Assembly (NCBI RefSeq): GCF_006345805.1
Contig: NC_043005.1
Coordinates: 94,426,001-94,490,000 of the forward strand
Length of the DNA: 64,000 nucleotides
Source: Octopus sinensis
Taxonomy: Eukaryota
Direction of reading: 5' to 3'
Shown here piece after piece: positions 1-61,264 of this stretch (the first letter of the stretch is position 1; every line of letters starts with the position of its first letter). Both the position numbers and the translations under genes were made by a program. The notes below the pieces were generated by a model that was not told where the DNA came from, did no database searches, and worked only from the letters and a program-made list of their open reading frames with translations.

Positions 1-1677
1 AAGAGGACCAATACGTTCAGTTCTTTCGTTGGCGGCACAGTTCCCGCCAACGGTATTCCTTCTCTTGTCGGTGGCACAACCCCAACCGACGTAGTTCCGG
101 GACATTCCGGTGCTACACTGACAGCCGGTAATGTCCCGTTTTTCTTCCTCTTTTTCTTTTTTTTCCCTTTTCAACTGAGGGAGGGTGCGTCTCCTCCGTG
201 GCTGGAAGATTCGCCTTCCTCTCCTCATCCCTATTATCCTTTGGTGAGCACCCATTGTTGCTCACCTTCCTCTTTCGGCCTCTGTTTGAGGAGTCCTCTG
301 CTTTCTCGGCCGTTATCGTTCCCTCTTCTAGAGGGGTTTTACTTAACTGTTCCGGGATCCTATTTTGTTCCCGAGGACAGTTCTTCTTTATGTGGCCGGA
401 CTCCAAGCACCGATGACACTTAGGGGGGGGGGGCGACCTTCAAGCATCACCGGGTACCTGCACCCGGCCATTTTCAAAAAATCTGGAAGAACCAGATTGG
501 CTGATTGGGTCCACAGGGTCAAAATTGCTTTTGACCCAACCCAAGCAGCCGCAGGAAGAACTTTTACATTGAGGAGCTTAGTTTCGCTGTCACCCAGACC
601 CCGGCGGATAGTCTCCTCTATCCACTCGGGTTCTATGTCGGGTGGCAATCCGCAGATCCAAGCTTTCATCAATTTCTTTTTTTTGTACGTGGGCAGGAAT
701 AAGATTTCCTTACCCTCCAGGAGTTTGCTAGCAAATTTGCAAGCCTCTTCAGGGGTGTCAAATAGCAACCACACCGTTGCATATTTGACACCCCTGGAAA
801 TGAATTTAATTGTTGGCAAATACTCTTCCAACTCCTCCTCAATTGCCGTCTTTTCGAATAGGGCGATGGTGTCGAGTGCCTTGGAGTAGGTTCTCAACAC
901 CACCGTCCTATCTTCACGGTCTTTTAACCACTTTTTAGGTGGTATGATTTCCCACTCCAAAATTTTGTTATTTTTCATTGCCATGTTTTTTTTTTTAAAT
1001 ATATTCAAATTAAACTAAAAAAGCAGGAAGAAAAAAGTTCAAAAGTCCAAATAAAATTTGATAGATTTTTGAAAAAACAAAAAAGGAGAAAGCACAACAG
1101 AAGGGAAGAAATCAACGGAAAGTCGCAATAAAGAAAAAAAACAAAAGGGGGGGGGTTAAGTGAAGTTCAAAAGAAAGTTAATAAACAGAAAAAACACAGC
1201 AAAAATATTCTGGCCTTGCGGTACTCCCGGCCTGGGTTGAACCTGGAACGCCGCAACTGCAACACAACCTCCACAAAAATGGGTCCGAAAGGTAATCCAA
1301 TAGTGGCTTATTTTTATAATTTTCTTGCGAAGTAGTAGTTTTCACAATTCATAAAAGTTCTTCACAGCACAATACAATTCTCACAATTACGTGAGAAAAC
1401 TATTTACTCAATTTATCGAGGACAGATACGCCCCGCCAAAATTTTCTCAGCGAGAAAAATATACTTTCCACATGTCGGCAGAATCAGAATTCTGAATCCA
1501 GTAGGACTTCCTGCCTGTAAAAAACAATTCTCAACAAAAACTCCCACTGGACCCAGAAAACAGAATCTTACCTTACATGGGGCTTCCAAAGTTTTCAATT
1601 TAAGACGGCTTCAATAGCACGTCTTCACCGCTTCAGTGCCAAACACAACACTGACTCGCACATGCGCAGAAGCAACC
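1..1677 (-). mobile_element. ORF1-only Tx1-like retroelement, copy A (diverged; 3' part runs off the window)
   Basis: 5' region homologous to copies B and C and begins right after the 15-bp junction at 1678-1692. Carries a diverged ORF1 (LEWEIIPPK..VVLRTYS..ISRGVKYATVWLLF..CHRCLESGHIKKNC). Confidence 0.8.
113..984 (-). pseudogene. Tx1-type ORF1/Gag-like protein (RRM-like + CCHC zinc knuckle), frameshifted
   Basis: ATG at 984. ORF 388..1008 shifts into ORF 113..406 at an 11-G run (423-433) immediately before C-HR-C-LESG-H-IKKN-C. The C-terminus probably continues past 113 in another frame. Confidence 0.8.
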
Positions 1678-1692
1678 GTTAGCAAGCTACTT
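1678..1692 (-). repeat. 15-bp junction / putative target-site duplication AAGTAGCTTGCTAAC
   Basis: Identical 15-mer at 1678-1692, 3659-3673 and 5643-5657. It matches 14/15 to the intact SINE site at 6476-6490 and 37793-37807. Confidence 0.8.
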
Positions 1693-3658
1693 TATTTTAT
1701 ATAATTTGCCACTAGGGCAGCACACAGAGTAGTAGCTACGGGCTGGACAAGGACATTAATGGATGATGGTGGTGGTGGATGAAGATGGTGATGGGAGAAG
1801 CCGAAAGCGCCCGCCGACTTTCGCTTCTCTAAAACAATGTTTCAATAAATACATTTAATAAAATGTTCACAATGATTTAAATTACATAAAAATGTTCAAC
1901 AATTCTTCTCGTCAGGTCCCCGAAGCAAATTGTCTTGACGCCTGCAGACAACTCTGCGACGACAAGTCGGGGCCTGCAAAGAGAAAAGTAAAGTCTTTCT
2001 TTTCAAAGGTCTCTGCGACCCTTGACAAAGTATCTTCTGTTACTTTTTCCGCAGCTACGCACGGAGGCCATAACGGACTCCTTGAGCCGACCGTGCCCTT
2101 ACGTACTCGGGCACCCAAGCCATTCAAGAATCTTTCCACCTCCTCTCCCTTGTGGTAAAGGAGGAGAAGCATCTCCTCTTCACAGGGAGGGACCTCACAC
2201 TGCTCCGTCAGTGGCACACTTCCTACTGGCGGAGCCTTGTCCGCGGGTGGCACACATCCCACCCGCGGCTCCGTCGGCGACACAGAAACGTCAGTCGTCC
2301 GACCTCTCCTTTTTCTCCTCCTTCTTTTGGGGGAGACTGCTGACCCAGGGGACTCCGTCACCAGACACGGGGGATTGCTATCCCCCTTCGCCCCCTGAGC
2401 GTTCTTTGGCGGGAAACCATTGTTGCTCGCCTTTCTCTTTCTTTTCGTGGAGGCAGCCTCCTCCACGACTTCCATCGTCTCCCCCTCCAATGAGGGGGCG
2501 GCGGGCGCCTTTTCCCCTTTCTGCTCCGGGGCACCACCACGGCCCCTGGGACAATTCTTCCTGATATGTCCGGGCTTCAGGCACAGATGACACTTGGGGG
2601 GGCGACCCTCGAGTATCACCGGGTACCTGTGCCCAGCCATTCTCAGGAAGTCCGGGAATTTCATTTCTCCCACGGCTACCGGTGTCCACAGGGTCAAAGT
2701 TGCCCTCGACCCCTCCCAGGCGACCGCGGGAGCCACCTTCACACTCAGCAGTCTGGGTCCGCTATCCCCCAGGCCTCGCCGGATGGTCTTCTCGATCCAT
2801 TCCGCCTCCGTGCCCGGGGGCAGCCCACACACCCAGGCTCTTTTCACTTTTCTGTCACAATACGAGGGGAGGAACAAAATTTCCTCTCCCTCCAGTGGCT
2901 CGCTAGCAAATCTGCTAGCTTCCTCGGGGGTACCAAACAGCAACCACACCGTTGCAAATTTAGTCCCCCGAGAAATAAATTTTATAGTTGGCAGGTAGTC
3001 CCCCAACTCTTTCTCTATAGTATTCCTGTCGAAGAGGGCAATGACTCCACGCGACCTAGAATAGGTTCGCAGGACCACCGTCCTCTTCTCAAGACTTTCA
3101 ATCCACTGCTTGGGTGGGACGACCTCCCATTCCAAAGCGGTGGTTTCTTTTGTTGCCATGTTTTTTTTTTTTTTTTTAAATAAATGTATTTAGAATAAAC
3201 TAAAAAACGAGAAGAAAAGGAAATCCGAAGAAAGTCACAATGAAAAAAGGAGAGAGTCAAATAAAGTTGAAAAGAAAGTCAAAAACACAGCAAAATCCTT
3301 TTGGCCATTTGGTACTCCCGGCCTAAATCGAACCAGGATCGCACAACTTCCACATAAATTGGTGTAAAATTGGTAGTTCTTCACAGCACAATGCAATTCT
3401 CACAATTCGAAGACGGATACGCCCCCAAAAATTTTCTCAGCGAGAAAAATATATCTGCCACATGTCGGCAGAATCAGAATTCTGAATTCAGTAGGACTTC
3501 CTGCATGTAAAAAATAATTCTCAACAAAAACTCCCACTGGACCCAGAAAACAGAATCTTAACTTACATGGGGCTTCCAAAATTTTCAATTCAAGACGGCT
3601 TCAAAAGCACATCTTCACTGCTTCAGTGGCAAACACAACACTGACTCGCACATGCGCA
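1693..3658 (-). mobile_element. ORF1-only Tx1-like retroelement, copy B (complete, about 1.97 kb)
   Basis: Bounded by the two 15-bp repeats. Single ORF, 3' UTR with a GC hairpin, terminal stem-loop and AATAAA. No RT or endonuclease coding sequence. Confidence 0.85.
1912..3159 (-). CDS. Intact 415-aa ORF1/Gag-like nucleic-acid-binding protein (RRM-like N-terminus, CX2CX4HX4C knuckle, K/R-rich segments)
   Basis: Open frame from an A-run-ACATGG start. Contains C-HL-C-LKPG-H-IRKN-C, KRKRK and KRRRRKRRGR. Motifs GTKFATV..F..PEEA..F and YPVILEGRPPKC match the ORF1 relic of the Tx1 element at 62.3-62.7 kb. Confidence 0.85.
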   Translation of the reverse strand: MATKETTALEWEVVPPKQWIESLEKRTVVLRTYSRSRGVIALFDRNTIEKELGDYLPTIKFISRGTKFATVWLLFGTPEEASRFASEPLEGEEILFLPSYCDRKVKRAWVCGLPPGTEAEWIEKTIRRGLGDSGPRLLSVKVAPAVAWEGSRATLTLWTPVAVGEMKFPDFLRMAGHRYPVILEGRPPKCHLCLKPGHIRKNCPRGRGGAPEQKGEKAPAAPSLEGETMEVVEEAASTKRKRKASNNGFPPKNAQGAKGDSNPPCLVTESPGSAVSPKRRRRKRRGRTTDVSVSPTEPRVGCVPPADKAPPVGSVPLTEQCEVPPCEEEMLLLLYHKGEEVERFLNGLGARVRKGTVGSRSPLWPPCVAAEKVTEDTLSRVAETFEKKDFTFLFAGPDLSSQSCLQASRQFASGT

Positions 3659-3673
3659 GTTAGCAAGCTACTT
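3659..3673 (-). repeat. 15-bp junction / putative target-site duplication
   Basis: Same 15-mer, between copies B and C. Confidence 0.8.
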
Positions 3674-5642
3674 TATTTTATATAATTTGCCACTAGGGCA
3701 GCACACAGAGTAGTAGCTACGGGCTGGACAAGGACATTAATGGATGATGGTGGTGGTGGATGAAGATGGTGATGGGAGAAGTCGAAAGCGCCCGCCGACT
3801 TTCGCTTCTCTAAAACAATGTTTCAATAAATACATTTAATAAAATGTTCAAAAAATGTTCAACAATTCTTCTCGTCAGGTCCCCGAAGCAAATTGTCTTG
3901 CCGCCTGCAGACAACTCTGCGACGACAAGTCGGGGCCTGCAAAGAGAAAGGTAAAGTCTTTCTTTTCAAAGGTCTCTGCGACCCTTGACAAAGTATCTTC
4001 TGTTACTTTTTCCGCAGCTACCTGCGGAGGCCATAACGGACTCCTTGAGCCGACCGTGTCCTTACGCTCTCGGTCACCCAAGCCATTCAAGAATCTTTCA
4101 ACCTCCTCTCCCTTGTGGTAAAGGAGGAGAAGCATCTCCTCTTCACAGGGAGGGACCTCACACTGCTCCGTCGGTGGCACACTTCCTACTGGCGGAGCCT
4201 TGTCCGCGGGTGGCACACCATCCCACCCGCGGCTCCGTCGGCGACACAGAAACGTCAGTCGTCCGACCTCTCCTTTTTCTCCTCCTTCTTTTGGGGGAGA
4301 CTGCTGACCCAGGGGACTCCGTCACCAGACACGGGGGATTGCTATCCCCCTTCGCCCCCTGAGCGTTCTTTGGCGGGCAACCATTGTTGCTCGCCTTTCT
4401 CTTTCTTTTCGTGGAGGCAACCTCCTCCACGACTTCCATCGTCTCCCCCTCCAATGAGGGGGCGGCGGGCGCCTTTTCCCCTCTCTGCTCCGGGGCACCA
4501 CCACGGCCCCTGGGACAATTCTTCCTGATATGTCCGGGCTTCAGGCACAGGTGACACTTGGGGGGGCGACCCTCGAGTATCACCAGGTACCTGTGCCCAG
4601 CCATTCTCAGGAAGTCCAGGAATTTCATTTCCCCCACGGCTACCGGTGTTCACAGGGTCAAAGTTGCCCTCGACCCCTGCCAGGCGACCGCGGGAGCCAC
4701 CTTCACACTCAGCAGTCTGGGTCCGCTATCCCCCAGGCCTCGCCGGATGGTCTTCTCGATCCATTCCGCCTCCGTGCCCGGGGGCAGCCCACACACCCAG
4801 GCTCTTTTCACTTTTCTGCCACAATACGAGGGAGGAACAAAATTTCCTCTCCCTCCAGTGGCTCGCTAGCAAATCTGCTAGCTTCCTCGGGGGTACCAAA
4901 CAGCAACCAGACCGTTGCAAATTTTGTCCCCCGAGAAATAAATTTTATAGTTGGCAGGTATTCCCCCAACTCTTTCTCTATAGTATTCCTGTCGAAGAGG
5001 GCAATGACTCCACGCGACCTAGAATAGGTTCGTAGGACCACCGTCCTCTTCTCAAGACTTTCAATCCACTGCTTGGGTGGGACGACCTCCCATTCCAAAG
5101 CGGTGGTTTCTTTTGTTGCCATGTTTTTTTTTTTTTTTTTAAATAAATGTATTTAGAATAAAACTGAAAAACGAGAAGAAAAGGAAATCCGAAGAAAGTC
5201 ACAATGAAAAAAGGAGAGAGTCAAATAAAGTTGAAAAGAAAGTCAAAGAAAGTTAAAAAGAAAGTCAAAAACACAGCAAAATCCTTTTGGCCATTTGGTA
5301 CTCCCGGCCTAAATCGAATCAGGATCGCACAACTTCCACAAAAATTGGTGTAAAATTGGTAGTTCTTCACAGCACCATACAATTTTCACAATTCGAAGAC
5401 GGATACGCCCCCAAAATTTTCTCAGCGAGAAAAATATATCTGCCACATGTCGGCAGAATCAGAATTCTGAATCCAGTAGGACTTCCTGCATGTAAAAAAT
5501 AATTCTCAACAAAAACTCCCACTGGACCCAGAAAACAGAATCTTACCTTACATGGGGCTTCCAAAGTTTCAATTCAAGACGGCTTCAAAAGCACATCTTC
5601 ACTGCTTCAGTAGCAAACACAACACTGACTCGCACATGCGCA
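3674..5642 (-). mobile_element. ORF1-only Tx1-like retroelement, copy C (complete)
   Basis: Near-identical to copy B over its full length (unit spacing 1981 and 1984 bp). Confidence 0.85.
3875..5122 (-). pseudogene. ORF1/Gag-like protein, copy C, two single-base indels
   Basis: ORFs 4808..5122, 4158..4637 and 3875..4216 together reproduce the copy B protein. One G is lost in a G-run near 4830 and one C is gained near 4219. Confidence 0.85.
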
Positions 5643-5679
5643 GTTAGCAAGCTACTTACCACACAGCTACTCCTGCGCC
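5643..5679 (-). mobile_element. 5' head of a tRNA-derived SINE, interrupted by the array
   Basis: Minus strand reads GGCGCAGGAGTAGCTGTGTGGTAAGTAGCTTGCTAAC, matching the SINE starts at 6454 (+) and 37829 (-). Confidence 0.85.
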
Positions 5680-6453: not shown

Positions 6454-6845
6454 GGCGTAGGAGTGACTGTGTGGTAAGTAGCTTGCTTACGAACCACATG
6501 GTTCCGGGTTCAGTCTCACTGCGTGGCACCTTGGGCAGGTGTCTTCTACTATAGCCCCGGGTCGACCAAAGCCTTGTGGGTGGATTTGGTAGACGGAAAC
6601 TGAAAGAAGCCCGTCGTATATATCTGTATATATATATATGTATGTGTGTATGTTTGTGTGTCTGTGTTTGTCCCCTCCCCAACTGATGCTGTTGTGTTTA
6701 CGTCCCCGTCACTTAGCGGTTCGGTAAAAGAGACCGATAGAATAAGTACTAGGCTTACAAAGAATATGTTCTGAGGTCGATTTGCTCGACTAAAAGAGGT
6801 ACTCCAGCATGGCCACAGCCACATTACTGAAACGAGTAAAAGAGT
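6454..6845 (+). mobile_element. tRNA-derived SINE (octopus OK/OR-like), full length
   Basis: Head GGCGTAGGAGTGACTGTGTGGTAAG..GGTTCAGTC, internal CA/TA repeat, tail shared with other copies in the window. Confidence 0.85.
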
Positions 6846-7279
6846 ATACTCACACCGATACCTTATAAGGTTGAGTTACGACATTTATAGAAAGAGGATG
6901 AGTGGAAAGTAGACACCCTTCTCTCCGCACATACAAACTTGGAGTAGCAATAGCACGTCACTATGATGAGATCGCGAATAACGATGAAAGGACTCTGACA
7001 AATTGATTGATTAACCGAGCAATTAATCAAACAACCGATTATTTAATTGATTAAGTGGTTTACTACTTGACAAATAATAATAAAAGATGTGAAATATAAC
7101 CAGTGGGCATATTTATAGCATAATGAATCTTTCAAAATCTCTATCATAAACCACGAAACGATGTTTCGTAGCAATATATATATATACATATCAAAACAAA
7201 ATGCTCTTATCATCAAAGAGAAACCTCAAATTATCTTAAAAGGTTATCAAATAAAAATATTTTTAGAAGTACAATAACA

Positions 7280-18150: not shown

Positions 18151-18205
18151 CGCTAATGGCAATGTCCTAGCATGCCCTCAGCCTCTGCTGAAATCAATAA
18201 GTGTA

Positions 18206-18206
<1 letters not shown>

Positions 18207-18236
<30 letters not shown>

Positions 18237-18376
18237 TGTATGTATGTATGTATGTATGTATGTATGTATGTATGTATGTATGTATGTATGTATGTATGTA
18301 TGTATGTGTGTATGTATGTATGTATGTATGTATGTATGTATGTATGTATGTATGTATGTATGTGTGTGTGTGTGTG

Positions 18377-18408
<32 letters not shown>

Positions 18409-18435
18409 TGTATGTATGTATGTATGTATGTATGT
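18207..18435. repeat. (TATG)n microsatellite abutting the RTE 5' end
   Basis: Direct reading. Confidence 0.95.
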
Positions 18436-20067
18436 AGACAGCTTCAGGAGAAGTGTGTGGAAAAGGGTCTGGATTTGTATCAGGTTTTTGTCGATCTGAC
18501 AAAAGCCTTTGATACCGTCAATAGAAAAGCATTGTGGAAAGTCCTCCAGAAACTTGGGTGTCCTGAAAAGTTCCCTGCTTTGGTTAGGTCTTTTCATGAA
18601 GACATGAATGGTAGGGTGAATGTAAGAGAGAAAATGTCGGAGCTCATTTCAATACAAAATGGAGTGAAACAGGGGGATATTCTGGCACCGACCCTATTTT
18701 GCGATGGTGTTGTGTATTGCATTCAGAAACTGGAGATACGGTGTTTACATCCATTATCGAACCTCTGGCAGCATATTTCACATCAGGCGCTTTGCTGTGA
18801 AAACAAAGGTATTTACCTCTATCATGAGAGACCTTTTGTATGCAGATGATTGTAAGCTAGTAGCACACACAGAAATTGATATGCAACACATTTTGAATGC
18901 ATTCTCTGATGCTTGCACCGCCTTAGGATTGACAGTCAATCTCAAGAAAACTGTTGTCATGCATCAACCTGCCCGTGGTAAGCAGTATAGTGTACCAAAT
19001 ATCTATGTGTATGGTAAACGGCTTGATGCAGTTGATCAGTTTGTCTACATGGGAAGCACTATTAATAGATATAGCAATTTGGATGATGAAATTCTTTATA
19101 GAATTAGGAAAGCAAGTGTTCTTTTTGGAAGGCTAGAAAAGCGCCTCTGGAGTCGGCGAGACATATGCAGAAAGACAAAGATAAAGGTGTACAAGGCATG
19201 TGTGCTCCCTTCTCTTCTCTATGCCTGCGAGACGTGGGTCACATATCGATACCACCTTAAACAACTGGAACGTTTCCATCAGCTGTGTCTCAGACGGATC
19301 TATGGCATTGAGTGGAAGGACCGCATCAGTGATCTTGAAATATTGGAAGGCTCTCGGTGTGAAAGTATAGAAGCTCTTGTGTTAAAGCAAAGGCTCAGAT
19401 GGAGTGGTCATCTGGTCAGGATGAAGGATTCAAGGATGCCAAAACAACTCTTTTATGGAGAGTTAGCTAAAGGAGAATGACCTCCACATAAACCAAAAAA
19501 GAGGTATAAGGACTTGCTGAAGGCTTCCTTAAGAGATACTTGCATCTCTCCTGACACATGGGAAGGCATAGCTATTGATCGTAGTAGGTGGAGAAGGATT
19601 GTGCATTAGGGGACAGCCACTTTTCAGAAATCTCGAGTTGCACATGAGAACGTAAGGAGGGATGTCAGGAAGGGCATCGTTGTTACACTTCCAGATGGGA
19701 AGGGTCTTGCTATGATGCTGACATGCAGTGTCAGTAAAGCTGGACTAAAGAGTCATCTTCGTAGTCATAAAGCGAGACAGATGAGTGACAACGTGGCCAC
19801 TGGTGGTGGTGTTACATACCATACTAATCATATCTGTCAGGCATGTGGAAGAGAGTGTAATTCGGCAGGAGGACTTAGGCGACATGCAAAGGTACATGAA
19901 GCCCAGTTACAGCTACAGCCGGCTATTACCGGTAAAGGTTTTAGCTGCCAATTCTGTACAAGACATTGTAGATCTTTGGCTGGGCTAAAAAGTCACATTC
20001 GATCACAGCACCAGTAACAGTTAAGCTTCGTGCAATGGCCATACTCGATAACGAGGGGGCAGCCATA
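18436..20067 (+). mobile_element. RTE-clade LINE, 5'-truncated, RT plus three C-terminal C2H2 fingers
   Basis: RQLQEKC..FVDLTKAFDTV, GVKQGDILAP, LLYADD, LRWSGHLVRM. The finger ORF 19712..20017 is in the same frame as 18704..19480, beyond two stops. Followed by (ATGT)n. Confidence 0.9.
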
Positions 20068-36376: not shown

Positions 36377-37343
36377 CCAGCCGAGAGATTGGGGTAGTAA
36401 CATGGCGGACGGGATTACGAGAAAGACAGACACACAGTCATGAGAGATGACAGGCGAGAGTATGACAGTAGAGCGAGGGGATGAGGGGCCGAGGAAGACA
36501 TACGATAGGATTAAGCAGTTAATAGAGATGGACTACGGTGTGAGGCATTGGCTGTTGTATGGTATGTGTTTAATTATGTATTGATATGTGAATTGAGTAA
36601 AGGACTTGTTGATGTGTTCATTATTGAGTTGTGGTATTTATGTTCAGAATTGTTGTGGAAAAGAAATGAGACAGTAAAAAGACATTGTGAATTAAGGAAA
36701 GAAAAAAAGAATTGTATTGATACGTGTTACAAAAAAAAAAAAGAGAAAGAAGAAAGAGAGAAAAAGAAAGACTCTGATATAGTCTTTAAAGACTGAAAAG
36801 AACTCTGAACTGTATCGTTAATGTGTACGTTAATTGTAACGTGAATTATTTGTGACATGAACATTGTATAATGTATTGATTTGTTGTTTTCTTTAAATGC
36901 TGTTGTTATATTGCATCTGCATGCTGTTGATTCTGTTGCTTGTACTTACCTTGATTTACCTGATGTATCACATTGTATTTGTTGTAATAGTCATATAAAC
37001 TAGTAGGTTAAATGTAAGCTGATTGCCTCTATGTCTCTTCCTGCTGCTGTTGTCTCTCTCCTCTCTGAGTTCCGTGGCGAATTCGCCAATCGATCGAGCC
37101 TGGTCAATCGTCGTCGCTCGACTTGTTGGGATCCCGGGTTCGAGTTCGAGCGACGGCAGGTGGGATTCCGTAACAACTTTCGGAGGTCCGTAACCCTATC
37201 ATTGTTTGAATTACATAATAATGGTTTTTCTCTAATTTATATATATTATATATTTATATTGTGAAAATTGATTTAATACTAAATTGAATTTTTCCCTGTA
37301 AGCTTGGAATTATACTCCTTAATATTATATATATTCTTTTATT

Positions 37344-37597
37344 CTTTTATTCGTTTCAGTCATTTGACTGCTGCTATGCGGGAGTACCACCTTTAGTCGA
37401 GTAAATCGACCCCAGGACTTGTAAGCCTAATACTTATTCTATCGGTGTTTTTTACCGAACCGCTACATTACGGGGACGTAAACACAACAGCATTGTTTGT
37501 CAAGCGATGGTGGGGGTACAAACACAGACACACAAGCATATACACACACATACATATGCATATATACATGCATGCATGCATACATACATACATACAT

Positions 37598-37651
<54 letters not shown>

Positions 37652-37829
37652 TATACATATATATATACGACGGGCTTATTTCAGTTTCCGCCTACCAAAT
37701 CTACTTACAGGCTTTGGTCGGCCCGAGGCTATAGAGGAAGACACTTGCCCAAGATGCCACGCAGTGGGACCGAACCCGGAACCATGTGGTTGGTAAGCAA
37801 GCTACTTACCACACAGCCACTCCTGCGCC
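37344..37829 (-). mobile_element. tRNA-derived SINE, full length (same family as 6454)
   Basis: Head GGCGCAGGAGTGGCTGTGTGGTAAGTAGCTTGCTTACC, B-box GGTTCGGTCC, internal microsatellite, tail. Confidence 0.9.
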
Positions 37830-39906: not shown

Positions 39907-41559
39907 TACCTTTATCAAAGGAAAAATGACAGAAACATCTAACGTTAACCTTGACCAACAGAATGTCATAAAAGAACTAGACCCAGCGGAGAGCTACAAG
40001 TACCTAGGGGTAATTGAAGGGAACGGAATAAGGCATTCAGAGATGAAGGAAAGGATCAGGAGAGAATGCTATCGAAGAGTGAGAGCAATACTCAAGACAG
40101 AGCTGAATGCAAGAAACAGGATCGAAGCAATCAATGCATTAGCTATACCAGTCGTGACTTACAGTTTCAATATTGTTAACTGGTCAATTACTGAAATATG
40201 TCAGCTCGACAGAAAAATAAGGAAACTGTTGACAATGCATAGAATGCACCACCCTAAGGCAGATACAGAACGACTCTATCTGCCAAGAAAAGAGGGAGGC
40301 CGTGGTCTTTTGCAACTGGCAATAACAATGAAGATTGCTACAATTGGCCTAGACACCTACCTGAAAAACTCTGAGGACTGGATGTTAAAACTTGTCTCAA
40401 AACATGAAAACAAGAAAGCATCATACTCAGTCGCAAAACAGGCAAAGAATATCTAAGTGAATTCCGAATACAACCAATTTCGGAATTAGAGATAGACATA
40501 CAAGAAACAAGCACAGAAAAAGCTAGGCGCATGAAAACCCGTGCCAAAACTGCGGCCTTAGATATTCTGAATAATAAATGGCAAGAAAAACCTCTCTACG
40601 GCAAATACCCAAAGAGAGCGAATAATGCAGATATCGACAAAGCCCTGACCCATCAATGGCTAATGGCCTCTGGCTTAAAATCTGAAACAGAGGGGTTTAT
40701 CATAGCAGCTCAAGATCAATGCCTACCAACAAGAAACTACCAGGCCAACACATTAAAGATCAGAAGCAGTCCAACGTGTCGTGTATGCAAGCAACAAAAT
40801 GAAACCATTGACCATGTGGTCTCCAAGTGCAGTCTTCTAGCGCCTACAGAGTACCTCAACAGGCACGATAGAGCTGCACAATATATTCACTGGGTAATCT
40901 GTAAAAACCTGGATTTGCCCCATGAAAAAAACTGGTGGGAACACAAACCACCCCCAGTGCTTGAAAATGACCACATCTCACTCCTCTGGAACTTCACCAT
41001 TCAAACTGACAGGAAGATAGATGCAAATAGGCCAGACGTCATATTGAAAGACTTCAAACAAAGAACATGCCTCCTCATTGATATGACTGTCCCAATCGAT
41101 ATAAACGTATCTGTCAGGACCTACCAAAAACTGAGCAAATATAAAGATCTTGAAATAGAAATCAGCAAAATGTGGAAGCTGAAGACTAAAACAATACCTG
41201 TTGTCATAGGTGCCCTGGGAATGATAGCAAAAGGGGCTGATAGCTACCTAACTCAGATACCAGGAAACCCAAAATGGCAGAAGTTCAAAAGATAGTGCTC
41301 ATGGGAACTGCTCATATCCTACGCAAAATACTCTCTATGTAACCTCAAGGTTTAAAACAACCATAATTTTCGGTTTAAAAAAAAAAAAAAAAAAAAACTT
41401 TTTTTTTAGACATTCATTAGTACAACATCCCCACCCCCCCAAATATATGGCACACTAGGCATAACAACAACATGAACTTCCAACCCTGTTGTCTCTTGAG
41501 GTCTCTGGGTGAGACTTGGAGCCAACTTGTACAAATATAAAGCAAAAGTCAAACATAGA
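39907..41559 (+). mobile_element. R4/Dong-type RLE non-LTR retrotransposon, 5'-truncated, in (TAA)n
   Basis: YKYLGV, CRVCKQQNETIDHVVSKC zinc knuckle, RPDVIL..IDMTVP..K..KY endonuclease. (TAA)n on both sides. Both frameshifts are single-base losses in homopolymers. Confidence 0.9.
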
Positions 41560-43884: not shown

Positions 43885-45545
43885 TTAACCAAATTGCAAC
43901 GTTGGTAGACTCAACAGGCGTATCGATTGAGGACCCTTAGCAGAGGCTTTTTCGACAATTTTCAAACAAGATGATGGTCGTGACGCCCCATCCCATTTGA
44001 TAGATCGGTACCTCCAATGCCTAGATTGGTCATCACTCGTGACGAAGTCGAACGCGTTATTTAAGGCTTCGATGTCAACAAGGGTCACAGCCCTGACGGC
44101 ACACACCCACAGGTTATCAAAGCGTTGGCTCCAGTCATCTGCGAACCTTTAACACTTCTATTCAATATGTCATTGGCGACGGGTGTTGTACCTGCGGACT
44201 GGAGAACAGCGATAATCTGCTTGATTTTCAAGAAAAGGAGCCGCGAAGACCCGCTTAACTACCGACCGGTTTCTCTTATTCAATAATCAGCAAGATGTTC
44301 GAAACCATCCTCAAGAAAAGTATGTTGCTCCACCTCCAAAACACAGCCTCTATCTCTGATTCCCAACACTGCTTCGTGCCGAAGAGATCATGCTTGACTA
44401 AGTTACTGGTAATGGAAGAATTGGTGACACGTATCCTGGATGATGGTGATGCTGTTGACATCGTTTTATTGGACTTTGCCAAAGCTTTTGACTCGGTTAA
44501 CCACCGCCTATTACTTGTCAAGCTTCAAGTATATAGTTTCCATCCGGATATTGTACGATGGGTTGGTTCCTTCCTCTCAGATCGCTCCTTCCAAGTCCAA
44601 GTTAACGTCTCCAGTGCGAGCAGTGGCGTGCCTCAAGGTTCAGTGCTTGGGCCGTTATTGTTTTTAGTCTTCATCAATGACTTGCCCGACGACCTTACGC
44701 AACACACCCTTCTATTTGCCGATGATGTCAAACTGGTCGCTCCTCGCAGTGATATTGATGATCTTCGTCGATGCCTCCACCAAGTTTGGAGATGGTCAAA
44801 CGAATAGGACCTGTGTCTGAACGTGTCAAAGTGCTGTCATCTGCTTGTTGGCTCCTCTCCTGCAACTCAACTTGATTTCGAGTCGGGTCATCTGCTGCTG
44901 GAAAGGACCGACCAGGTAAAGGACCTGGGTATCTTGGTGGATTCTTCCTTTTCGCCTTCGGTCCAATGCGTCCATGCTGCCAACAAAGTACGCGGAGTTC
45001 TGTTTTTGATTCGACGGTCATTCGGAATGCTCACAGCAGCCATATTCCTACCGCTCTATGTCACGCTGGTGAGACCCATGTTGGAGTACGGGATTCAAGC
45101 CTCTTCTCCTTATCTCCTCAAAGACATACATCATCTTGAAAGAATCCAGAAGCTGGCTACCCGCATGGTTCTTGGTCTCAAGCATTTGTCTTATGAAGAA
45201 AGGCTGAAGACGCTCGAAAAACGACGACGCTGTGGTGATCTCATTCTCGCTCACAACATCATAAGCGGAAAGTGTAAACTCTCGAAAGAGCTGTTCTTCA
45301 CTCTTGCTCCAGAGCGTCGGCTGCGGGGTCATTCCGAAAAGCTCTATGCACGATGATTTCATCTCAATCGAAGGCGAGAGGCTTTCTCCGTCCGGGTTGC
45401 GGATCCGTGGAATAAGCTGCCAGACGAGATAGTGAAGATGCCGACGACCGCTCGGTTCAAAGTCTCTCTTGACCAGAAATAGCCTGAACTCTTTGTATGA
45501 CCACCCTCCCTGTATACATAACTCCCTGTCCCCCTCCATGGCCTT
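43885..45545 (+). mobile_element. CR1-type LINE RT region, 5'-truncated
   Basis: PDGTHPQVIK, NYRPVSL, LDFAKAFDSV, GVPQGSVLGPLLF, FADD, LEKRRRCGDLI. Confidence 0.85.
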
Positions 45546-47279: not shown

Positions 47280-48838
47280 TTAACATTCCTCATCATCTGT
47301 GAGACGAGGTCGCTTTGCATCTGAACCAAAGAAGTTCACATTGATTGTTCCCCCATATATTGGAGCCGAGAAAATGGAGTGCAATGAACCAAAGCAAGTG
47401 ACAGCGTTCCGAGGTTGACTCGACGTAACGTTGACGTTCACTTGCACTTGCTGCTGCTGTGTGTGATGGAGGTACAAGCGAACCAGGCTGGTCGTTGTTG
47501 CTACTAAGGATGTTACTGATGGCACGATGACAATCCATGGAAATATTGCTGTAACTATTGATGCTTTGCACATTACGATGTCCAGATATCTGCATGATTT
47601 CAGTTGGAGGAATGTTCTGGTCAGCGAGCTTCTGCACAAGGTATTTGTGTGCTGAATGGTTCGTGAATCTTCGATTGTCCAAACCAGCTGATTTAGCCAT
47701 CCTTTTCATAATTGTACCTAGTTTGTTGACACCGACCGGTTGACGTTTAAACCAGGGATGAGAATGGGAGGCATCTTTGCAGTTGGTGGCCAAATAAAAT
47801 AGTGAATCCGGCGATGAATAATCTGATGGTCTCAGATCAGCAAAACGCTTGTACAGGTTAACTGGACAACGCTCATCATTCGTCGCCCATGCTTTTGGGT
47901 AGATGTTATGTGCATGGTCGAGATTATCACCTTGACAAGTTTTGGACTGTCGCTCCCTAAACTGAAGGAATTCCTTGCCTTCATTGTCAACATGCAAAGA
48001 AACGTCGCCCCATCGCATGTCGTTGTGAGGTTTGACACTCCGGATACCAAAGTGAAGGGTGTTGTTCCACCATAGCGTGTTGAGGATGGATTCAGGTGTG
48101 TTCGGACCGAGCTGGTCACATTCCCATAGCTTGTTGATATCATCGTCGGAGAGAGATTCCGCGCGTCGAGGTAGGTTTCCCATTCCTTCACTTTTCAACA
48201 GCTTTTGCTTCGTTTTTAGTACGTCATGTAGTTTCACGAATGTCCCGTCCGAGAATAGTGACGTCGAGTAGTGTTTTGACTTCAGATATCTTTCAATACT
48301 GGATAACATTCCCCTCAATGATGAAGGTTTAATAGTTGCTACCGTCCGGCTTTCGTAACGAAATAAAGAAAGTACAGAGAATGTCACAAAGTTCGCTTTT
48401 GTCAATAGATTCAATTGGACGCGTGTCGCCATTTGTCGCCATGAAAGCAAACAATCGTTTAACATCATAGTTTGTTTTCCGAAGAGTATTTTTATTTTGA
48501 TTACCTTGAACGAATTTATCTATTCCAGAATGATCATACCTCGGTTGAAATTCAAGATCATTATGGCTATCATCAAAGAAATCGTCACGAAGAAGATCAT
48601 TGTACACCTCATCAGGGATGTTAAATGCAGGGTTCGATGACAATCCACTCGTGGATGACACTGTTTCAGGTACCTTTGTTAACTTGTATCCAGCAACATG
48701 TCGAACTTGGCCAGTATTTATCTTCACATTGAACATTCTATATGTTCCAAGAGGTTGAACAACGGATAATACTCTTCCCCCATCTTTACCATCAATCTTA
48801 ACAAAATCATTCACCTTGATATCGATAACATTAGCCAT
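47280..48838 (-). pseudogene. Crypton tyrosine recombinase (about 520 aa reconstructed, two frameshifts)
   Basis: RKPDGSNY/[E]PSSLRG..SIERYL, HFGIRS..MRWGDV, PVGVNKL, FTNHSAH..ISGHRNVQSINSY. The C-terminus GGTINVNF..KRPRL is in another frame. Confidence 0.85.
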
Positions 48839-58415: not shown

Positions 58416-58495
<80 letters not shown>

Positions 58496-58515
58496 CATCT
58501 ATCTATTTATCTGTC
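58416..58515. repeat. (TATC)n microsatellite
   Basis: Direct reading. Confidence 0.95.
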
Positions 58516-58518
58516 TAT

Positions 58519-59813
58519 AGGCACGGACGTGCACCGTGCCGGGCCGGAGCATCCATGACAATCTCCATCTGATGCGCTACATCATAGACAGAGTAGTTAA
58601 GGAACCTGGCATGGGTGGGGACCTGATCAATTTGGATCAATCGAAAGCCTTCGATACTTGGATGCAGTCCTGAGAGCGGCTGGTTTCGGTCCCGTCTTCC
58701 GTGGCTGGATAGCTGCTTTATACAGAGGCATCCGTTCGGTAATTCGCGTAAATGGACATCTATCGAGACCTTTCGACATTGCACGTTCGCTTCTCGTCGC
58801 TTCTATACGTATTGACTCTTGAGCCACTACTGCGGAAGCTGGCGACTCTGAGGGGCCTCCCGCGAGAATTGGGATGCGGGACGAGCGTGTCTGCATACGC
58901 AGACGACGTCACCGTCATAGTGACAAGCCACGAGCACAACGAGCTGGTCGGCGAGACACTGAAAGACTACGAAGCGGTGACAGGAGCGAAAATCAACCGG
59001 GAAAAGTCAGTGGGTTTGCGGCTCGGCACATGGAGAAGCAAGCCCATGCCGTCCACCAGTACCTCCGTCGTGGGACGCTGGACGAACGGCCCGGTTGAGT
59101 TACTCGGGGTCTGGTTCGGTCCGGACCTCCAAATGGAGAAGAACTGGAACGAGATAACGAGTAGGGTGGTCACTCTCGCCCGGCAATGCGCCGAGAGGAA
59201 ACTGTCCCTAAGAGGTCGGGTGGAGGTGGCGAACACGTACATCGCGTCCATCATCAACTACTGCATGACCGCCGTACCTTGTCCCGACCCTACCATCACC
59301 AAACTAGAACGCATTCTCTTCCGCTTCTTGTGGAAAGGATGCGTCCCGATGGTCAGGCGATCCATTTGCTGTCAACACCCGTTAAAAGGAGGGCTGGGCA
59401 TGCCGTGGTTGATGATGCGCAGACACACGCTGAGACTGCGACATCTCCGGCTCTATGTAGACGACGGTGAACAGGTGTGGTCGCCGTTTGTGAGGCACGC
59501 TTTCCCGCAGCTCGTCTCCATGACCGAACTGCAGTCGTGGATCAAAAAGAGGCCGAGGAAGGGCGAATGGCACCGCGAGTGTCGCGTTGCTCTCAAGCAA
59601 CTTCATATTGACATTTCTGTGATAACGATCCCTATTGATCTATTTTTTTCCTTTTCCTTTCATTTTTATCCCCCTCCCTTTTTTTCTCCTCTTTCTTTCC
59701 TTTTACGATCCCTTTTGATCGAAAACCAAACCCCCTTTTTATCCCCAAAAGAAAAGCTCTACCTTGTAATTTGTCCTGTCTGTGTGCAGCCATGTGTGGC
59801 TAATAAAGAAACA
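58519..59813 (+). mobile_element. Tx1-type LINE, 5'-truncated and internally deleted, in (TATC)n
   Basis: SIHDNL..LDQSKAFD, SAYADDVT, AKINREKS, KGGLGMP. Joins directly to the 3' UTR ending AATAAAGAAA-CA(TATC)n. Confidence 0.9.
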
Positions 59814-59893
<80 letters not shown>

Positions 59894-59894
<1 letters not shown>

Positions 59895-61242
59895 GTGGAA
59901 AGGATGCGTCCCGATGGTCAGGCGATCCATTTGCTGTCAACACCCGTTAAAAGGAGGGCTGGGCATGCCGTGGTTGATGATGCGCAGACACGCGCTGAGA
60001 CTGCGACATCTCTGGCTCTATGTAGACGACGGTGAACAGGTGTGGTCGCCGTTTGTGAGGCACGCTTTCCCGCAGCTCGTCTCCATGACCGAACTGCAGT
60101 CGTGGATCAAAAAGAGGCCGAGGAAGGGCGAATGGCACCGCGAGTGTCGCGTTGCTCTCAAGCAACTCTGCCGTCCTGGGTCGACCTTAAGTGACTTCAA
60201 CACAACCAAAGCATTCTATAGGGGTTTAGTGGAGGGGAGGTACGACGACGAGCTCGGGGCGAACCTGGACGTCGACGAGGAGTACCTGACCCGCCTGTTC
60301 GGGACGACTTTCGGGCCAGGGCCCATGGACAACTTCCAGAGATCCCTGGCCTGGCAGTGCTACCGAGAAGCGCTACCCGTTCGGGATAAGCTCTACAGAC
60401 ACGGCTCGAGAAACACGGGGCCGACCTGCCCGAGATGCGGTCAGAGCGACGAAACCGTTCTGCACGCACTCGTTCAGTGTCCAACAATTTCCGACTGTGG
60501 GCTTATGTCGAACAACTGCTGTCACGTGTGGGACGAGTCGGTTTATCAGCTGAGTCTATCGTCAATATTGTCACGCCTCCTTCCTTCAAACGGGAAGGAA
60601 GAGCTATTTTCATCATCTTGTGGCTATGGCGAAAGAATGTATCTGGTGGACGCGTCTGAAAGGATTGGAGACAAACACTTTCCTCTCTGGTCAATCTCTC
60701 ATCAACTTCTTCAAGTACCACTTGAAAAGGAAAGTGAGAGTAGAGAGGCAAGTTTTGTCTAGCGAATGTTTTTTAAAAAAAAAGATGGGTGAATGTAGCA
60801 AGAATGGCACGTATGAATGACGAAGCCACCTTGAGCATAGTCCTATGAACCCAGAAATCGAAAACAGAGAGTTGCTTATTTGCAAAAAAAAAAAAAAAAA
60901 AAAAAGAAATATAAAATGTGACTTCATTGACCGAGGTTACCGTGGTCTTTTCCGCAGGCTTTTCTTTCCACGGGTAAACCTCACCTGTCCTCCCCTTCAC
61001 ACTTCATATTGACATTTCTGTGATAACGATCCCTATTGATCATTTTTTTCCTCCCCCCCCTTTTTTTTTTTTTTTTTTTAACCCCCCTTATTTTTGTCCT
61101 CTTTCTCTCCTTTTACGATCCCTTTTGATCGAACCTCCCCCTTCCTTTTTTTTTTTTTTTTTTTTTAATACCTTCAAAAGAAAAGCTCTACCTTGTAATT
61201 TGTTCTATCTGTGTGCAGCCCTGTGTGGCTAATAAAGAAACA
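59894..61242 (+). mobile_element. Tx1-type LINE, 5'-truncated, with ORF2 C-terminal zinc knuckle and full 3' UTR
   Basis: ALPVRDKL..CPRCGQSDETVLHALVQC. Same 3' end as the preceding copy. Starts within (TATC)n. Confidence 0.9.
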
Positions 61243-61264
61243 TATCTATCTGTTTATCTATCTC

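What the first reader, a model, noticed from the sequence alone, without database searches (positions are those of the whole stretch)
1..5679. Head-to-tail array of RT-less, Gag/ORF1-only retroelements stacked in one site of a SINE
Seen: three units of about 1.97 kb on the minus strand, each with one ORF1-like ORF and no RT. Every junction is AATAAA of the upstream unit overlapping the 15-mer AAGTAGCTTGCTAAC, then the next 5' end. The outermost 15-mer is the natural continuation of a SINE 5' head, and empty versions of the site exist in intact SINEs at 6476-6490 and 37793-37807. Copy A is clearly diverged from B and C and has 9 extra 5' nucleotides. Known: Tx1-clade LINEs are often sequence-specific (U2 snRNA, 5S rRNA, tRNA arrays, microsatellites), and repeated insertion at a duplicated target gives such arrays; Drosophila HeT-A is a gag-only element in head-to-tail arrays. 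Inference: a non-autonomous Tx1 derivative that keeps its own ORF1, borrows ORF2 and targets an abundant SINE, which is an element parasitising another element. I do not know of a described example.
Basis: partly seen in the sequence, partly recalled or inferred. Interest (0 to 1): 0.88.

Follow-up and report, generated by a model that had tools for sequence, protein, structure and literature searches.

The report
ORF1-only retroelements stacked in a SINE
An octopus genome carries a head-to-tail stack of short retrotransposons that keep only the RNA-binding gene of an L1/Tx1-type LINE, have no reverse transcriptase, and sit at one fixed position of an abundant SINE; each ingredient is already known, but this combination was not found described.

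Summary
On the minus strand there are three units: C at 5642-3674, B at 3658-1693, and A from 1677 until the window cuts it. Each is separated by the exact 15-mer AAGTAGCTTGCTAAC, and the outermost copy continues a SINE 5' head at 5679-5643. No unit has an endonuclease or reverse transcriptase. Unit B has an intact 415-aa ORF with two RRM-like domains, a CCHC knuckle, a basic linker and a conserved C-terminal RRM-like domain. Its distant homologues are ORF1 of octopod two-ORF LINEs that carry APE, RT and zf-RVT. The ORF2 of one of them best matches human L1 ORF2p. Those LINEs also form head-to-tail arrays with a short target repeat at each junction, and one such array lies in this window in a (TATC)n microsatellite. 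Two further copies of this family in Octopus sinensis, on different chromosomes with unrelated flanks, abut the same SINE-head position. ORF1 dN/dS is about 0.16-0.20. At least two other ORF1-only lineages exist, flanked by 16-bp and 11-bp direct repeats. Not shown: the SINE remainder at any 3' flank, the autonomous partner, and a formal RT phylogeny. Tx1 targeting of other transposons, arrays sandwiching a target-site duplication, and ORF1-only LINE derivatives (HAL1) are all published. I rate this a new variant of a known kind.

The parts
5643..5679 (-). 5' head (positions 1-37) of a tRNA-derived octopod SINE. It ends in the first copy of the 15-mer (5643-5657).
   Evidence: Matches positions 1-36 of the SINE at 6455-6850 at 89% identity and breaks off exactly at the start of unit C.
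3674..5642 (-). Unit C, 1969 bp. It has a 5' UTR of about 520 nt, an ORF1-type ORF broken by two frameshifts, and a 3' UTR ending in AATAAA.
3659..3673 (-). The 15-mer AAGTAGCTTGCTAAC between C and B, interpreted as the regenerated target-site duplication.
1693..3658 (-). Unit B, 1966 bp, the only copy with an intact ORF.
1912..3159 (-). 415-aa ORF of unit B. It has two RRM-like domains (about aa 10-185), a CCHC knuckle (aa 190-203, nt 2551-2592), a disordered basic linker, and a C-terminal domain with RRM-like beta-alpha-beta-beta-alpha-beta topology (about aa 330-412).
   Evidence: Pfam gives a weak zf-CCHC match. The AlphaFold2 model has pLDDT 75-90 for aa 10-205. Top Foldseek matches are multi-RRM proteins. 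It is homologous to ORF1 of two-ORF LINEs. The C-terminal part is conserved in the O. sinensis copy, E=8e-12.
1707..1719 (-). 3'-terminal hairpin motif UGCC[CUAGU]GGCA of unit B, lying just upstream of AAUAAA. The same motif in unit C is at 3688-3700.
   Evidence: The motif is shared with the 3' ends of autonomous relatives and shows compensatory changes.
1678..1692 (-). The 15-mer between B and A.
1669..1677 (-). Nine extra nt, GGTTGCTTC, at the 5' junction of unit A. They resemble the target sequence GCTTGCTT(A)C.
   Evidence: The same TTGCTTC lies immediately upstream of the 5' end in both O. sinensis copies.
1..1668 (-). Unit A, from a diverged subfamily, cut by the window edge. Its closest relatives are the O. 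sinensis copies in L001 and L014 (73-75% nt identity).
6476..6490 (+). Empty target site (AAGTAGCTTGCTTAC) inside the intact SINE at 6455-6850.
37793..37807 (-). Empty target site inside the intact SINE at 37340-37828.

Best explanation
The units are members of a non-autonomous, protein-coding family derived from octopod L1/Tx1-type LINEs. They keep a 5' leader, an ORF1 (RRM-RRM-CCHC plus an extra C-terminal domain) and the family-typical 3' stem-loop with AAUAAA. They have no endonuclease or reverse transcriptase.

Inferred mechanism: their RNA is bound by their own ORF1p and copied by the ORF2 protein of a still unidentified autonomous relative. That relative's endonuclease would nick a fixed site in the tRNA-like head of an abundant SINE, around GGT|AAGTAGCTTGCTTAC|C. 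Staggered nicks would give a 15-bp target-site duplication, so every insertion recreates the target on both sides.

At least two successive insertions, and probably three (an A-type copy and B-type copies), into the recreated site would then build the array: SINE head-15mer-C-15mer-B-15mer-A. Because AAUAAA sits at the very end of the element, transcripts probably run into the flanking target. The extra GGTTGCTTC of copy A suggests that RNAs also carry target-derived bases at the 5' end. Both features would help precise homing.

Shown: the anatomy, the homology, the fixed 5' junction at three loci in two species, and purifying selection on ORF1. Inferred: trans-mobilisation, the nick positions, and the order of insertions.
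For: (1) Exact 15-mer at three junctions, with 0.00 expected by chance. The outermost copy is contiguous with a SINE head.

(2) A differs from B/C by 21-38% in the ORF but has the same junction. This excludes a simple recent duplication of one unit.

(3) Independent O. sinensis copies are L001 on chromosome CM016886 and L014 on chromosome CM016865. Neither locus shows flank similarity to the window locus, and both 5' ends abut the same SINE-head position within 0-5 nt.

(4) ORF homologues are ORF1 of full-length LINEs carrying APE, RVT_1 and zf-RVT. The ORF2 of one of them matches human L1 ORF2p at 2e-71 over APE and RT.

(5) Those LINEs themselves form head-to-tail arrays with a short repeated target at the junctions. 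L002 has three units at 99% identity. L003 has units at 73-98% identity. Window 58420-64000 holds an array in (TATC)n.

(6) ORF1-only units flanked by direct repeats exist in other lineages. L003 495-2185 has a 16-bp repeat and sits directly next to a full-length LINE. L011 7919-9652 has an 11-bp repeat.

(7) The 3' motif and hairpin are shared with autonomous relatives and show compensatory pair changes: UGCC/GGCA, AGCC/GGCU, GCCC/GGGU and AGGC/GCCU.

(8) dN/dS is 0.16-0.20 across subfamilies and species.

(9) Published precedent exists for Tx1 targeting of transposons and for arrays sandwiching a target-site duplication (PMC4494074).
Against: The SINE remainder downstream of an element 3' end was not seen anywhere. 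The window cuts copy A, and both O. sinensis copies lack the 3' end and any SINE 3' part.

No autonomous element with the same target or the same ends was found in the window or in the fetched loci.

Only three loci could be examined, and genome-wide copy number and flanks are unknown.

Both O. sinensis heads read TTCC where the SINE consensus has TTACC. This could mean that part of the 'head' travels with the element.

The hairpin is only 4 bp, and single-sequence folding z-scores are weak (-0.4 to -2.3).

Clade assignment to Tx1, as opposed to other L1-like groups, was not tested by phylogeny.
Confidence: 0.7

Rival explanations
1. The SINE-like head travels with the element. It would be a captured or co-transcribed 5' head, as in Tx1 families with U1/U2 heads, or a template-switch chimera. 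Under this reading the family does not target SINEs, and the 15-mers are 5'-terminal remnants of that head.
For: Both O. sinensis copies have a complete head but no SINE remainder downstream. All A-type copies share TTGCTTC immediately upstream of TGYGCATG, including the 9 extra nt of copy A. PMC4494074 describes Tx1 families with target-derived heads.
Against: B and A would have to be truncated at exactly the same head nucleotide and then inserted exactly at the 3' end of the neighbouring unit. Copy A carries both the 15-mer and its own GGTTGCTTC, which fits 'target plus element-borne bases' better. Related ORF1-only units in L003 and L011 are flanked by ordinary 16-bp and 11-bp direct repeats. 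The heads differ from each other as independent SINE copies would.
Confidence: 0.15
2. One or two insertions into a SINE were followed by local tandem duplication or unequal crossing-over, so the array says little about repeated targeting.
For: B and C are 98.1% identical with identical junctions. The first ~250 nt of A are 92-98% identical to B/C, which suggests gene conversion within the array.
Against: A and B/C belong to subfamilies that are 21-38% diverged in the ORF. A is closer to the O. sinensis copies (73-75%) than to its neighbours, so at least two independent insertions hit the same 15 bp. Arrays of diverged units (73-98%) at one site recur in related LINEs.
Confidence: 0.1
3. The units are a tandemly duplicated host gene family domesticated from a LINE ORF1, not mobile elements.
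For: There is an intact ORF in B, purifying selection, and an NCBI gene model for the O. sinensis copy.
Against: Two of the three window copies and both O. sinensis copies are disrupted. The loci are not syntenic. The units carry LINE-type 3' motifs and direct-repeat junctions and sit inside a SINE. dN/dS below 1 is also expected for active ORF1-coding elements.
Confidence: 0.04

Closest known systems
Tx1-clade sequence-specific LINEs (Tx1L in Tx1D; Tx1-Mar in Mariner-N4_AMi; Keno, Kibi, Koshi), with the co-targeted non-autonomous SINEU-3
   Same: Relatives have APE, RT and a C-terminal zinc domain, with an ORF1 of RRM plus CCHC type. The target is a fixed sequence, often inside another transposon or a microsatellite. 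Tandem copies sandwich a target-site duplication of about 16 bp, and a non-autonomous passenger shares the target (PMC4494074).
   Different: Here the passenger encodes a protein (ORF1). The target is a tRNA-derived SINE head, which is not among the targets listed in that paper. The partner LINE is not identified, and clade membership was not tested by RT phylogeny.
HAL1 (half-L1) of mammals
   Same: A non-autonomous LINE derivative that encodes only ORF1p and arose several times independently (PMC5753468, citing Bao and Jurka 2010). Here at least three ORF1-only lineages were seen (window family, L003, L011).
   Different: HAL1 has a Type II (Transposase_22) ORF1 and inserts like L1 without site specificity. 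This family has RRM/CCHC-type ORF1 with an extra C-terminal domain, has no poly(A) tail, and sits at a fixed site.
Drosophila HeT-A
   Same: A Gag-only non-LTR element that relies on another element's RT and forms head-to-tail arrays (from general knowledge, not tested here).
   Different: HeT-A is in the jockey clade, is telomere-specific, and adds to chromosome ends rather than to an internal target with a target-site duplication. No sequence relationship was detected or expected.
R1/R2-type rDNA-specific LINEs
   Same: Precise homing that probably uses target-derived bases carried on the RNA ends (general knowledge, used here only by analogy).
   Different: They belong to different clades, are autonomous, and target rRNA genes.

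Membership tests
L1/Tx1-type LINE (autonomous) | ORF2 with an APE endonuclease, a reverse transcriptase and a C-terminal zinc domain | tested here: not met
   The units have no APE or RT. The feature is present in relatives that share the ORF1 family: L002, L003, L013 and window 58519-64000.
L1/Tx1-type LINE (autonomous) | RT groups with the Tx1 clade in a phylogeny against reference elements (RTclass1/Repbase) | not testable with these tools
   No Repbase or Tx1 reference sequences were available. There is only indirect support. ORF2 of the L002 relative best matches L1 ORF2p. L1-Tx1 is the only L1-like LINE class among those listed as recently active in O. vulgaris (PMC13282606).
Type I LINE ORF1p (Khazina and Weichenrieder) | At least one RRM plus a CCHC zinc knuckle | tested here: met
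   C-X2-C-X4-H-X4-C at aa 190-203. The AlphaFold2 model shows two confident RRM-like domains, and the top Foldseek matches are tandem-RRM proteins. The definition is taken from PMC5203782.
Sequence-specific (target-specific) non-LTR element | Independent copies share the same flanking target at the same position and orientation | tested here: met
   Five of five 5' junctions (window C, B and A; L001; L014) and two of two observable 3' junctions carry the SINE 15-mer. The 3' SINE remainder was not observed.
Sequence-specific (target-specific) non-LTR element | Target-site duplication regenerated at each side, allowing head-to-tail stacking | tested here: met
   Three identical 15-mers bracket C and B. 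Analogous direct repeats occur in L003 (16 bp), L011 (11 bp), L002 and window 61237-61257.
HAL1-like ORF1-only non-autonomous LINE | Encodes ORF1p only | tested here: met
   One 415-aa ORF1-type ORF in a 1.97-kb unit, with no detectable ORF2 remnant.
HAL1-like ORF1-only non-autonomous LINE | Shares 5' and 3' termini with an identifiable autonomous parent (origin by internal deletion) | tested here: inconclusive
   The 3' motif and hairpin are shared with related autonomous LINEs. No parent with matching ends or more than 40% ORF1 identity was found.
HAL1-like ORF1-only non-autonomous LINE | Mobilised in trans by a LINE ORF2p | not testable with these tools
   This needs a retrotransposition assay, or a genome-wide dating of copies against candidate partner LINEs.
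tRNA-derived SINE (the target) | tRNA-like head with A and B boxes | tested here: inconclusive
   ARAGORN and Rfam call nothing. A-box-like and B-box-like motifs (TGGCTGTGTGGTAAG and GGTTCCGGGTTCAGTC) are visible by eye. The repeat occurs as several copies in the window and in every octopus locus fetched.

The most novel reading that the evidence does not exclude
Octopods harbour a guild of 'half-LINEs': protein-coding, ORF1-only parasites of target-specific Tx1-type LINEs. They arose at least three times, remain under purifying selection, and inherit the homing specificity of their partners. One lineage has gained a third RRM-like domain and homes to a fixed site in the most abundant SINE. 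That would make three layers of parasitism: the half-LINE depends on a LINE and lives inside a SINE that itself depends on LINEs.
Probability: 0.45. Interest if true: 0.6.

Novelty: new variant of a known kind. Interest (0 to 1): 0.45.

Why it matters
If confirmed genome-wide, this would be a clear invertebrate counterpart of mammalian HAL1, with site specificity added. It would show that ORF1-only derivatives arise repeatedly in the Tx1 group. It would also add a SINE to the list of transposons used as a 'safe harbour' by target-specific LINEs.

It offers a simple system for two questions. One is why a non-autonomous element keeps its own ORF1 (cis-preference of ORF1p, or competition with the partner). 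The other is how target-derived bases on the RNA ends contribute to precise homing.

It also matters for octopus genome annotation. These units are predicted as host genes (LOC115225585) and are easily mis-annotated.

Tried and rejected
ORF2 remnant. tblastn of a related 1132-aa ORF2 against the units, and Pfam at E<=10 on the C-terminal domain, found nothing. A by-eye resemblance between 'RFLN' in B and the APE N-terminus of related ORF2s is not kept in the O. sinensis copy, so I dropped it.

Partner or further copies in the window. blastn of unit B against the whole window finds only 1-5657.

More copies elsewhere. Two word-indexed protein searches and one exhaustive HMMER search give only one close relative, P0001, plus a chimeric gene model, P0020, which led to L014. 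A scan of metagenome contigs for the junction pattern gave 0 hits. No octopus genome could be searched at the DNA level.

SINE remainder. It was not found downstream of the L001 or L014 copies, where only microsatellite matches appear.

Orthology. There is no flank similarity between the L001 or L014 loci and the window locus.

RNA annotation. ARAGORN and Rfam find nothing in the window.

Formal pair counting on the 3' hairpin. MAFFT misaligned the loop-length variants. I therefore tabulated the stems by eye and supported them with single-sequence folds.
Full report
OBSERVATION

The first 5.7 kb of the window, read on the minus strand, is a head-to-tail array. Unit C is 5642-3674 (1969 bp). 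Unit B is 3658-1693 (1966 bp). Unit A starts at 1677 and is cut by the window edge.

The exact 15-mer AAGTAGCTTGCTAAC lies at 5657-5643, 3673-3659 and 1692-1678. One-mismatch versions (..GCTTAC) lie in two intact SINEs at 6476-6490 (+) and 37793-37807 (-). None is expected by chance.

The 37 nt at 5679-5643 match positions 1-36 of the full SINE at 6455-6850 at 89% identity. They stop where unit C begins. At both internal junctions the upstream unit ends ...AAAATAAA, overlapping the 15-mer by two A's. Unit A has 9 extra nt, GGTTGCTTC, before its 5' end.

B and C are 98.1% identical over 1945 aligned nt, plus a 22-nt duplication and an 18-nt deletion. A is 92-98% identical to B/C over the first ~300 alignment columns. 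It is only 62-79% identical in the rest of the 5' UTR and the ORF.

WHAT THE UNITS ENCODE

Only B has an intact ORF, 415 aa at 3159-1912. C has two frameshifts. A's frameshifts fall in homopolymer runs and may be assembly errors.

Pfam sees only a weak CCHC knuckle. An AlphaFold2 model built on 15 homologues is confident (pLDDT 75-90) for residues 10-205. That region contains two beta-alpha-beta-beta-alpha-beta domains followed by the knuckle. Residues 209-327 are disordered. Residues 330-412 form a moderately confident RRM-like domain. The top Foldseek matches are tandem-RRM proteins such as hnRNP A1 UP1, IMP3 RRM12, NONO/SFPQ and the multi-RRM Raver1. RRM plus CCHC is the 'Type I' LINE ORF1p architecture, which is associated with Tx1-like elements (PMC5203782).

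There is no APE or RT in the units and no detectable remnant of one.

The C-terminal domain is real coding sequence. It is 31% identical (E=8e-12) between B and an O. sinensis copy, although the DNA no longer aligns.

For the N-terminal 200 codons, dN/dS is 0.16 (B vs A) and 0.20 (A vs O. sinensis). Synonymous sites are near saturation.

RELATIVES

All detectable homologues come from cephalopod data or unidentified sequencing runs, and every named one is an octopod: Octopus sinensis, O. vulgaris, O. bimaculoides or Argonauta.

The distant ones, at about 25-30% identity, are ORF1 of full-length two-ORF LINEs with Exo_endo_phos, RVT_1 and zf-RVT domains. The ORF2 of the L002 element matches human L1 ORF2p at 2e-71 across APE and RT.

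These LINEs are themselves stacked head to tail with a short repeated sequence at each junction.
- L002 (O. vulgaris) has at least three 5.27-kb units at 99% identity.
- L003 (O. sinensis) has units at 73-98% identity.
- L015 shows another tandem junction.
- In this window, a 5'-truncated copy at 58519-61236 starts right after (TATC)n at 58420-58518. It is followed by TATCTATCTGTTTATCTATCT and then the 5' end of a second copy running to the window edge.

Sequence-specific insertion and stacking are therefore the norm in this LINE group. That matches the published behaviour of the Tx1 clade (PMC4494074).

ORF1-ONLY ELEMENTS ARE RECURRENT

L003 495-2185 is a 1.7-kb unit with a 463-aa ORF1-type ORF. 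It is 30% identical to B and 37% identical to its neighbour's ORF1. It is bracketed by a 16-bp direct repeat, GGATGTGATATAATGA, and is immediately followed by a full-length LINE.

L011 7919-9652 (O. vulgaris) is a solitary 1.73-kb ORF1-only unit with an 11-bp direct repeat, TGCTGGGTTCG. There is no ORF2 within 8 kb.

SHARED 3' END

The units end with CTCTGTGTGCTGCCCTAGTGGCAAAT..AATAAA. The autonomous relatives and the other ORF1-only units end with the same pattern.

The core is a 4-bp hairpin with a 5-6-nt loop (CUNGU in most), and the stem changes in a compensatory way:
- UGCC/GGCA in the units here.
- AGCC/GGCU in the window LINE.
- GCCC/GGGU in L002 and L003.
- AGGC/GCCU in L011.

Single-sequence folding recovers this hairpin in 6 of 7 cases. 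It also gives an outer stem pairing the CUNUGU stretch with the AAUAAA region, but the z-scores are weak. This is the kind of 3' signal that a LINE RT could recognise. It is the only direct hint of how an ORF2 could be borrowed.

IS THE SINE REALLY THE TARGET?

Two more copies of this family were found in O. sinensis. Both are closest to copy A (73-75% nt identity). They are L001 on chromosome CM016886 and L014 on chromosome CM016865. Neither locus shows flank similarity to the window locus.

Both 5' ends abut a complete SINE head in the same orientation:
- L001: ...GGTAAGTAGCTTGCTTCC|TGTGCATGCG
- L014: ...GGTAAGAAGTTTGCTTCCAC|TGCGCATGTGCGAG
- Window: ...GGTAAGTAGCTTGCTAAC|TGCGCATGTGCGAG

So five of five 5' junctions, at three loci in two species, fall within 0-5 nt of one SINE position. 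In the window, two different subfamilies occupy the same 15 bp.

The weak point is the 3' side. Both O. sinensis copies are degenerate and broken before their 3' ends, and no SINE remainder follows them.

All A-type copies have TTGCTTC just upstream of TGYGCATG, including the 9 extra nt of copy A. I take this to mean that the RNA carries some target-derived bases at its 5' end. A rival reading, that the whole head travels with the element, cannot be excluded for the solitary copies. That rival explains the array poorly, because B and A would need identical truncation points and end-to-end insertion.

MECHANISM

My best explanation (confidence 0.7) has these steps.
- An ORF1-only derivative of a target-specific L1/Tx1-type LINE is transcribed, probably reading past its terminal AAUAAA into the flanking target.
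- The RNA is bound by its own ORF1p.
- It is reverse-transcribed at a nick made by a partner LINE's endonuclease in the SINE head.
- A 15-bp staggered cut duplicates the target, so the site survives each insertion and is hit again. This gives the stack.

The high similarity of the first ~250 nt between A and B/C, against ~70% elsewhere, points to gene conversion or recombination within the array. The O. sinensis 5' leader is only ~71% identical.

Three rivals are scored separately: local duplication, captured head, and domesticated host gene.

COMPARISON AND NOVELTY

Tx1-clade LINEs that home to other transposons are described in PMC4494074. So are a non-autonomous passenger with the same target, and tandem copies sandwiching a 16-bp target-site duplication. 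ORF1-only L1 derivatives (HAL1) that arose repeatedly are described in PMC5753468. O. vulgaris is reported to have 13 recently active L1-Tx1 families (PMC13282606).

Three things were not found in the papers searched. The first is a protein-coding ORF1-only passenger in the Tx1 group. The second is a tRNA-derived SINE as the homing site. The third is the extra C-terminal RRM-like domain. I could not check Repbase or Dfam.

Verdict: a real feature, a new variant of a known kind, of moderate interest.

Noticed in passing
window 58420-64000 (+): A head-to-tail pair of two-ORF L1/Tx1-type LINEs inserted in a (TATC)n microsatellite. A 5'-truncated copy at 58519-61236 (RT and zf-RVT, 55% aa identity to the O. 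vulgaris L002 ORF2) lies right after (TATC)n at 58420-58518. Then come 21 nt of TATC-like repeat (61237-61257) and a second copy, with ORF1 at about 61482-62712 and the ORF2 APE from 63635, running off the window. It looks like a microsatellite-specific LINE in the manner of Kibi/Koshi.
   Followed up: partly
L003 495-2185 (O. sinensis) and L011 7919-9652 (O. vulgaris): Two further, unrelated lineages of 1.7-kb ORF1-only elements, flanked by 16-bp and 11-bp direct repeats. The L003 one sits directly upstream of a full-length LINE at the same target.
   Followed up: partly
window 1-1668 vs 1693-5642: Copy A is a mosaic. Its first ~250 nt are 92-98% identical to B/C, while the rest is 62-79% identical. 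This suggests gene conversion or recombination between neighbouring array members.
   Followed up: partly
window 421-431 and about 140-160 (minus-strand ORF of copy A): Both frameshifts of copy A fall in homopolymer runs, a C run in the sense strand and an A-rich run. They may be assembly errors, in which case copy A could be intact.
   Followed up: no
window 47293-48468 (-): A 391-aa ORF with DUF3504 and a phage-integrase (tyrosine recombinase) domain. It is likely a Crypton- or DIRS-like element or a gene derived from one.
   Followed up: no
window 18172-19480 (+), 40531-41295 (+), 44295-44807 (+): Further fragments of LINE ORF2 (RVT_1, zf-RVT), unrelated at the DNA level to the array units.
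   Followed up: no
L001 10001-10846; L014 6001-32638: O. sinensis gene models are built on degenerate copies of this element. LOC115225585 is one. The chimeric model P0020 also carries a weak rve hit. This is probably mis-annotation of transposon sequence as host genes.
   Followed up: partly
L002 2438-17026 (O. vulgaris): At least three full-length 5.27-kb LINEs in tandem at 99% identity with intact ORF1 and ORF2, joined by ..ACAC|CCGAYAGG|ACGTTAC... They appear very young and potentially active. The target sequence is not identified.
   Followed up: no
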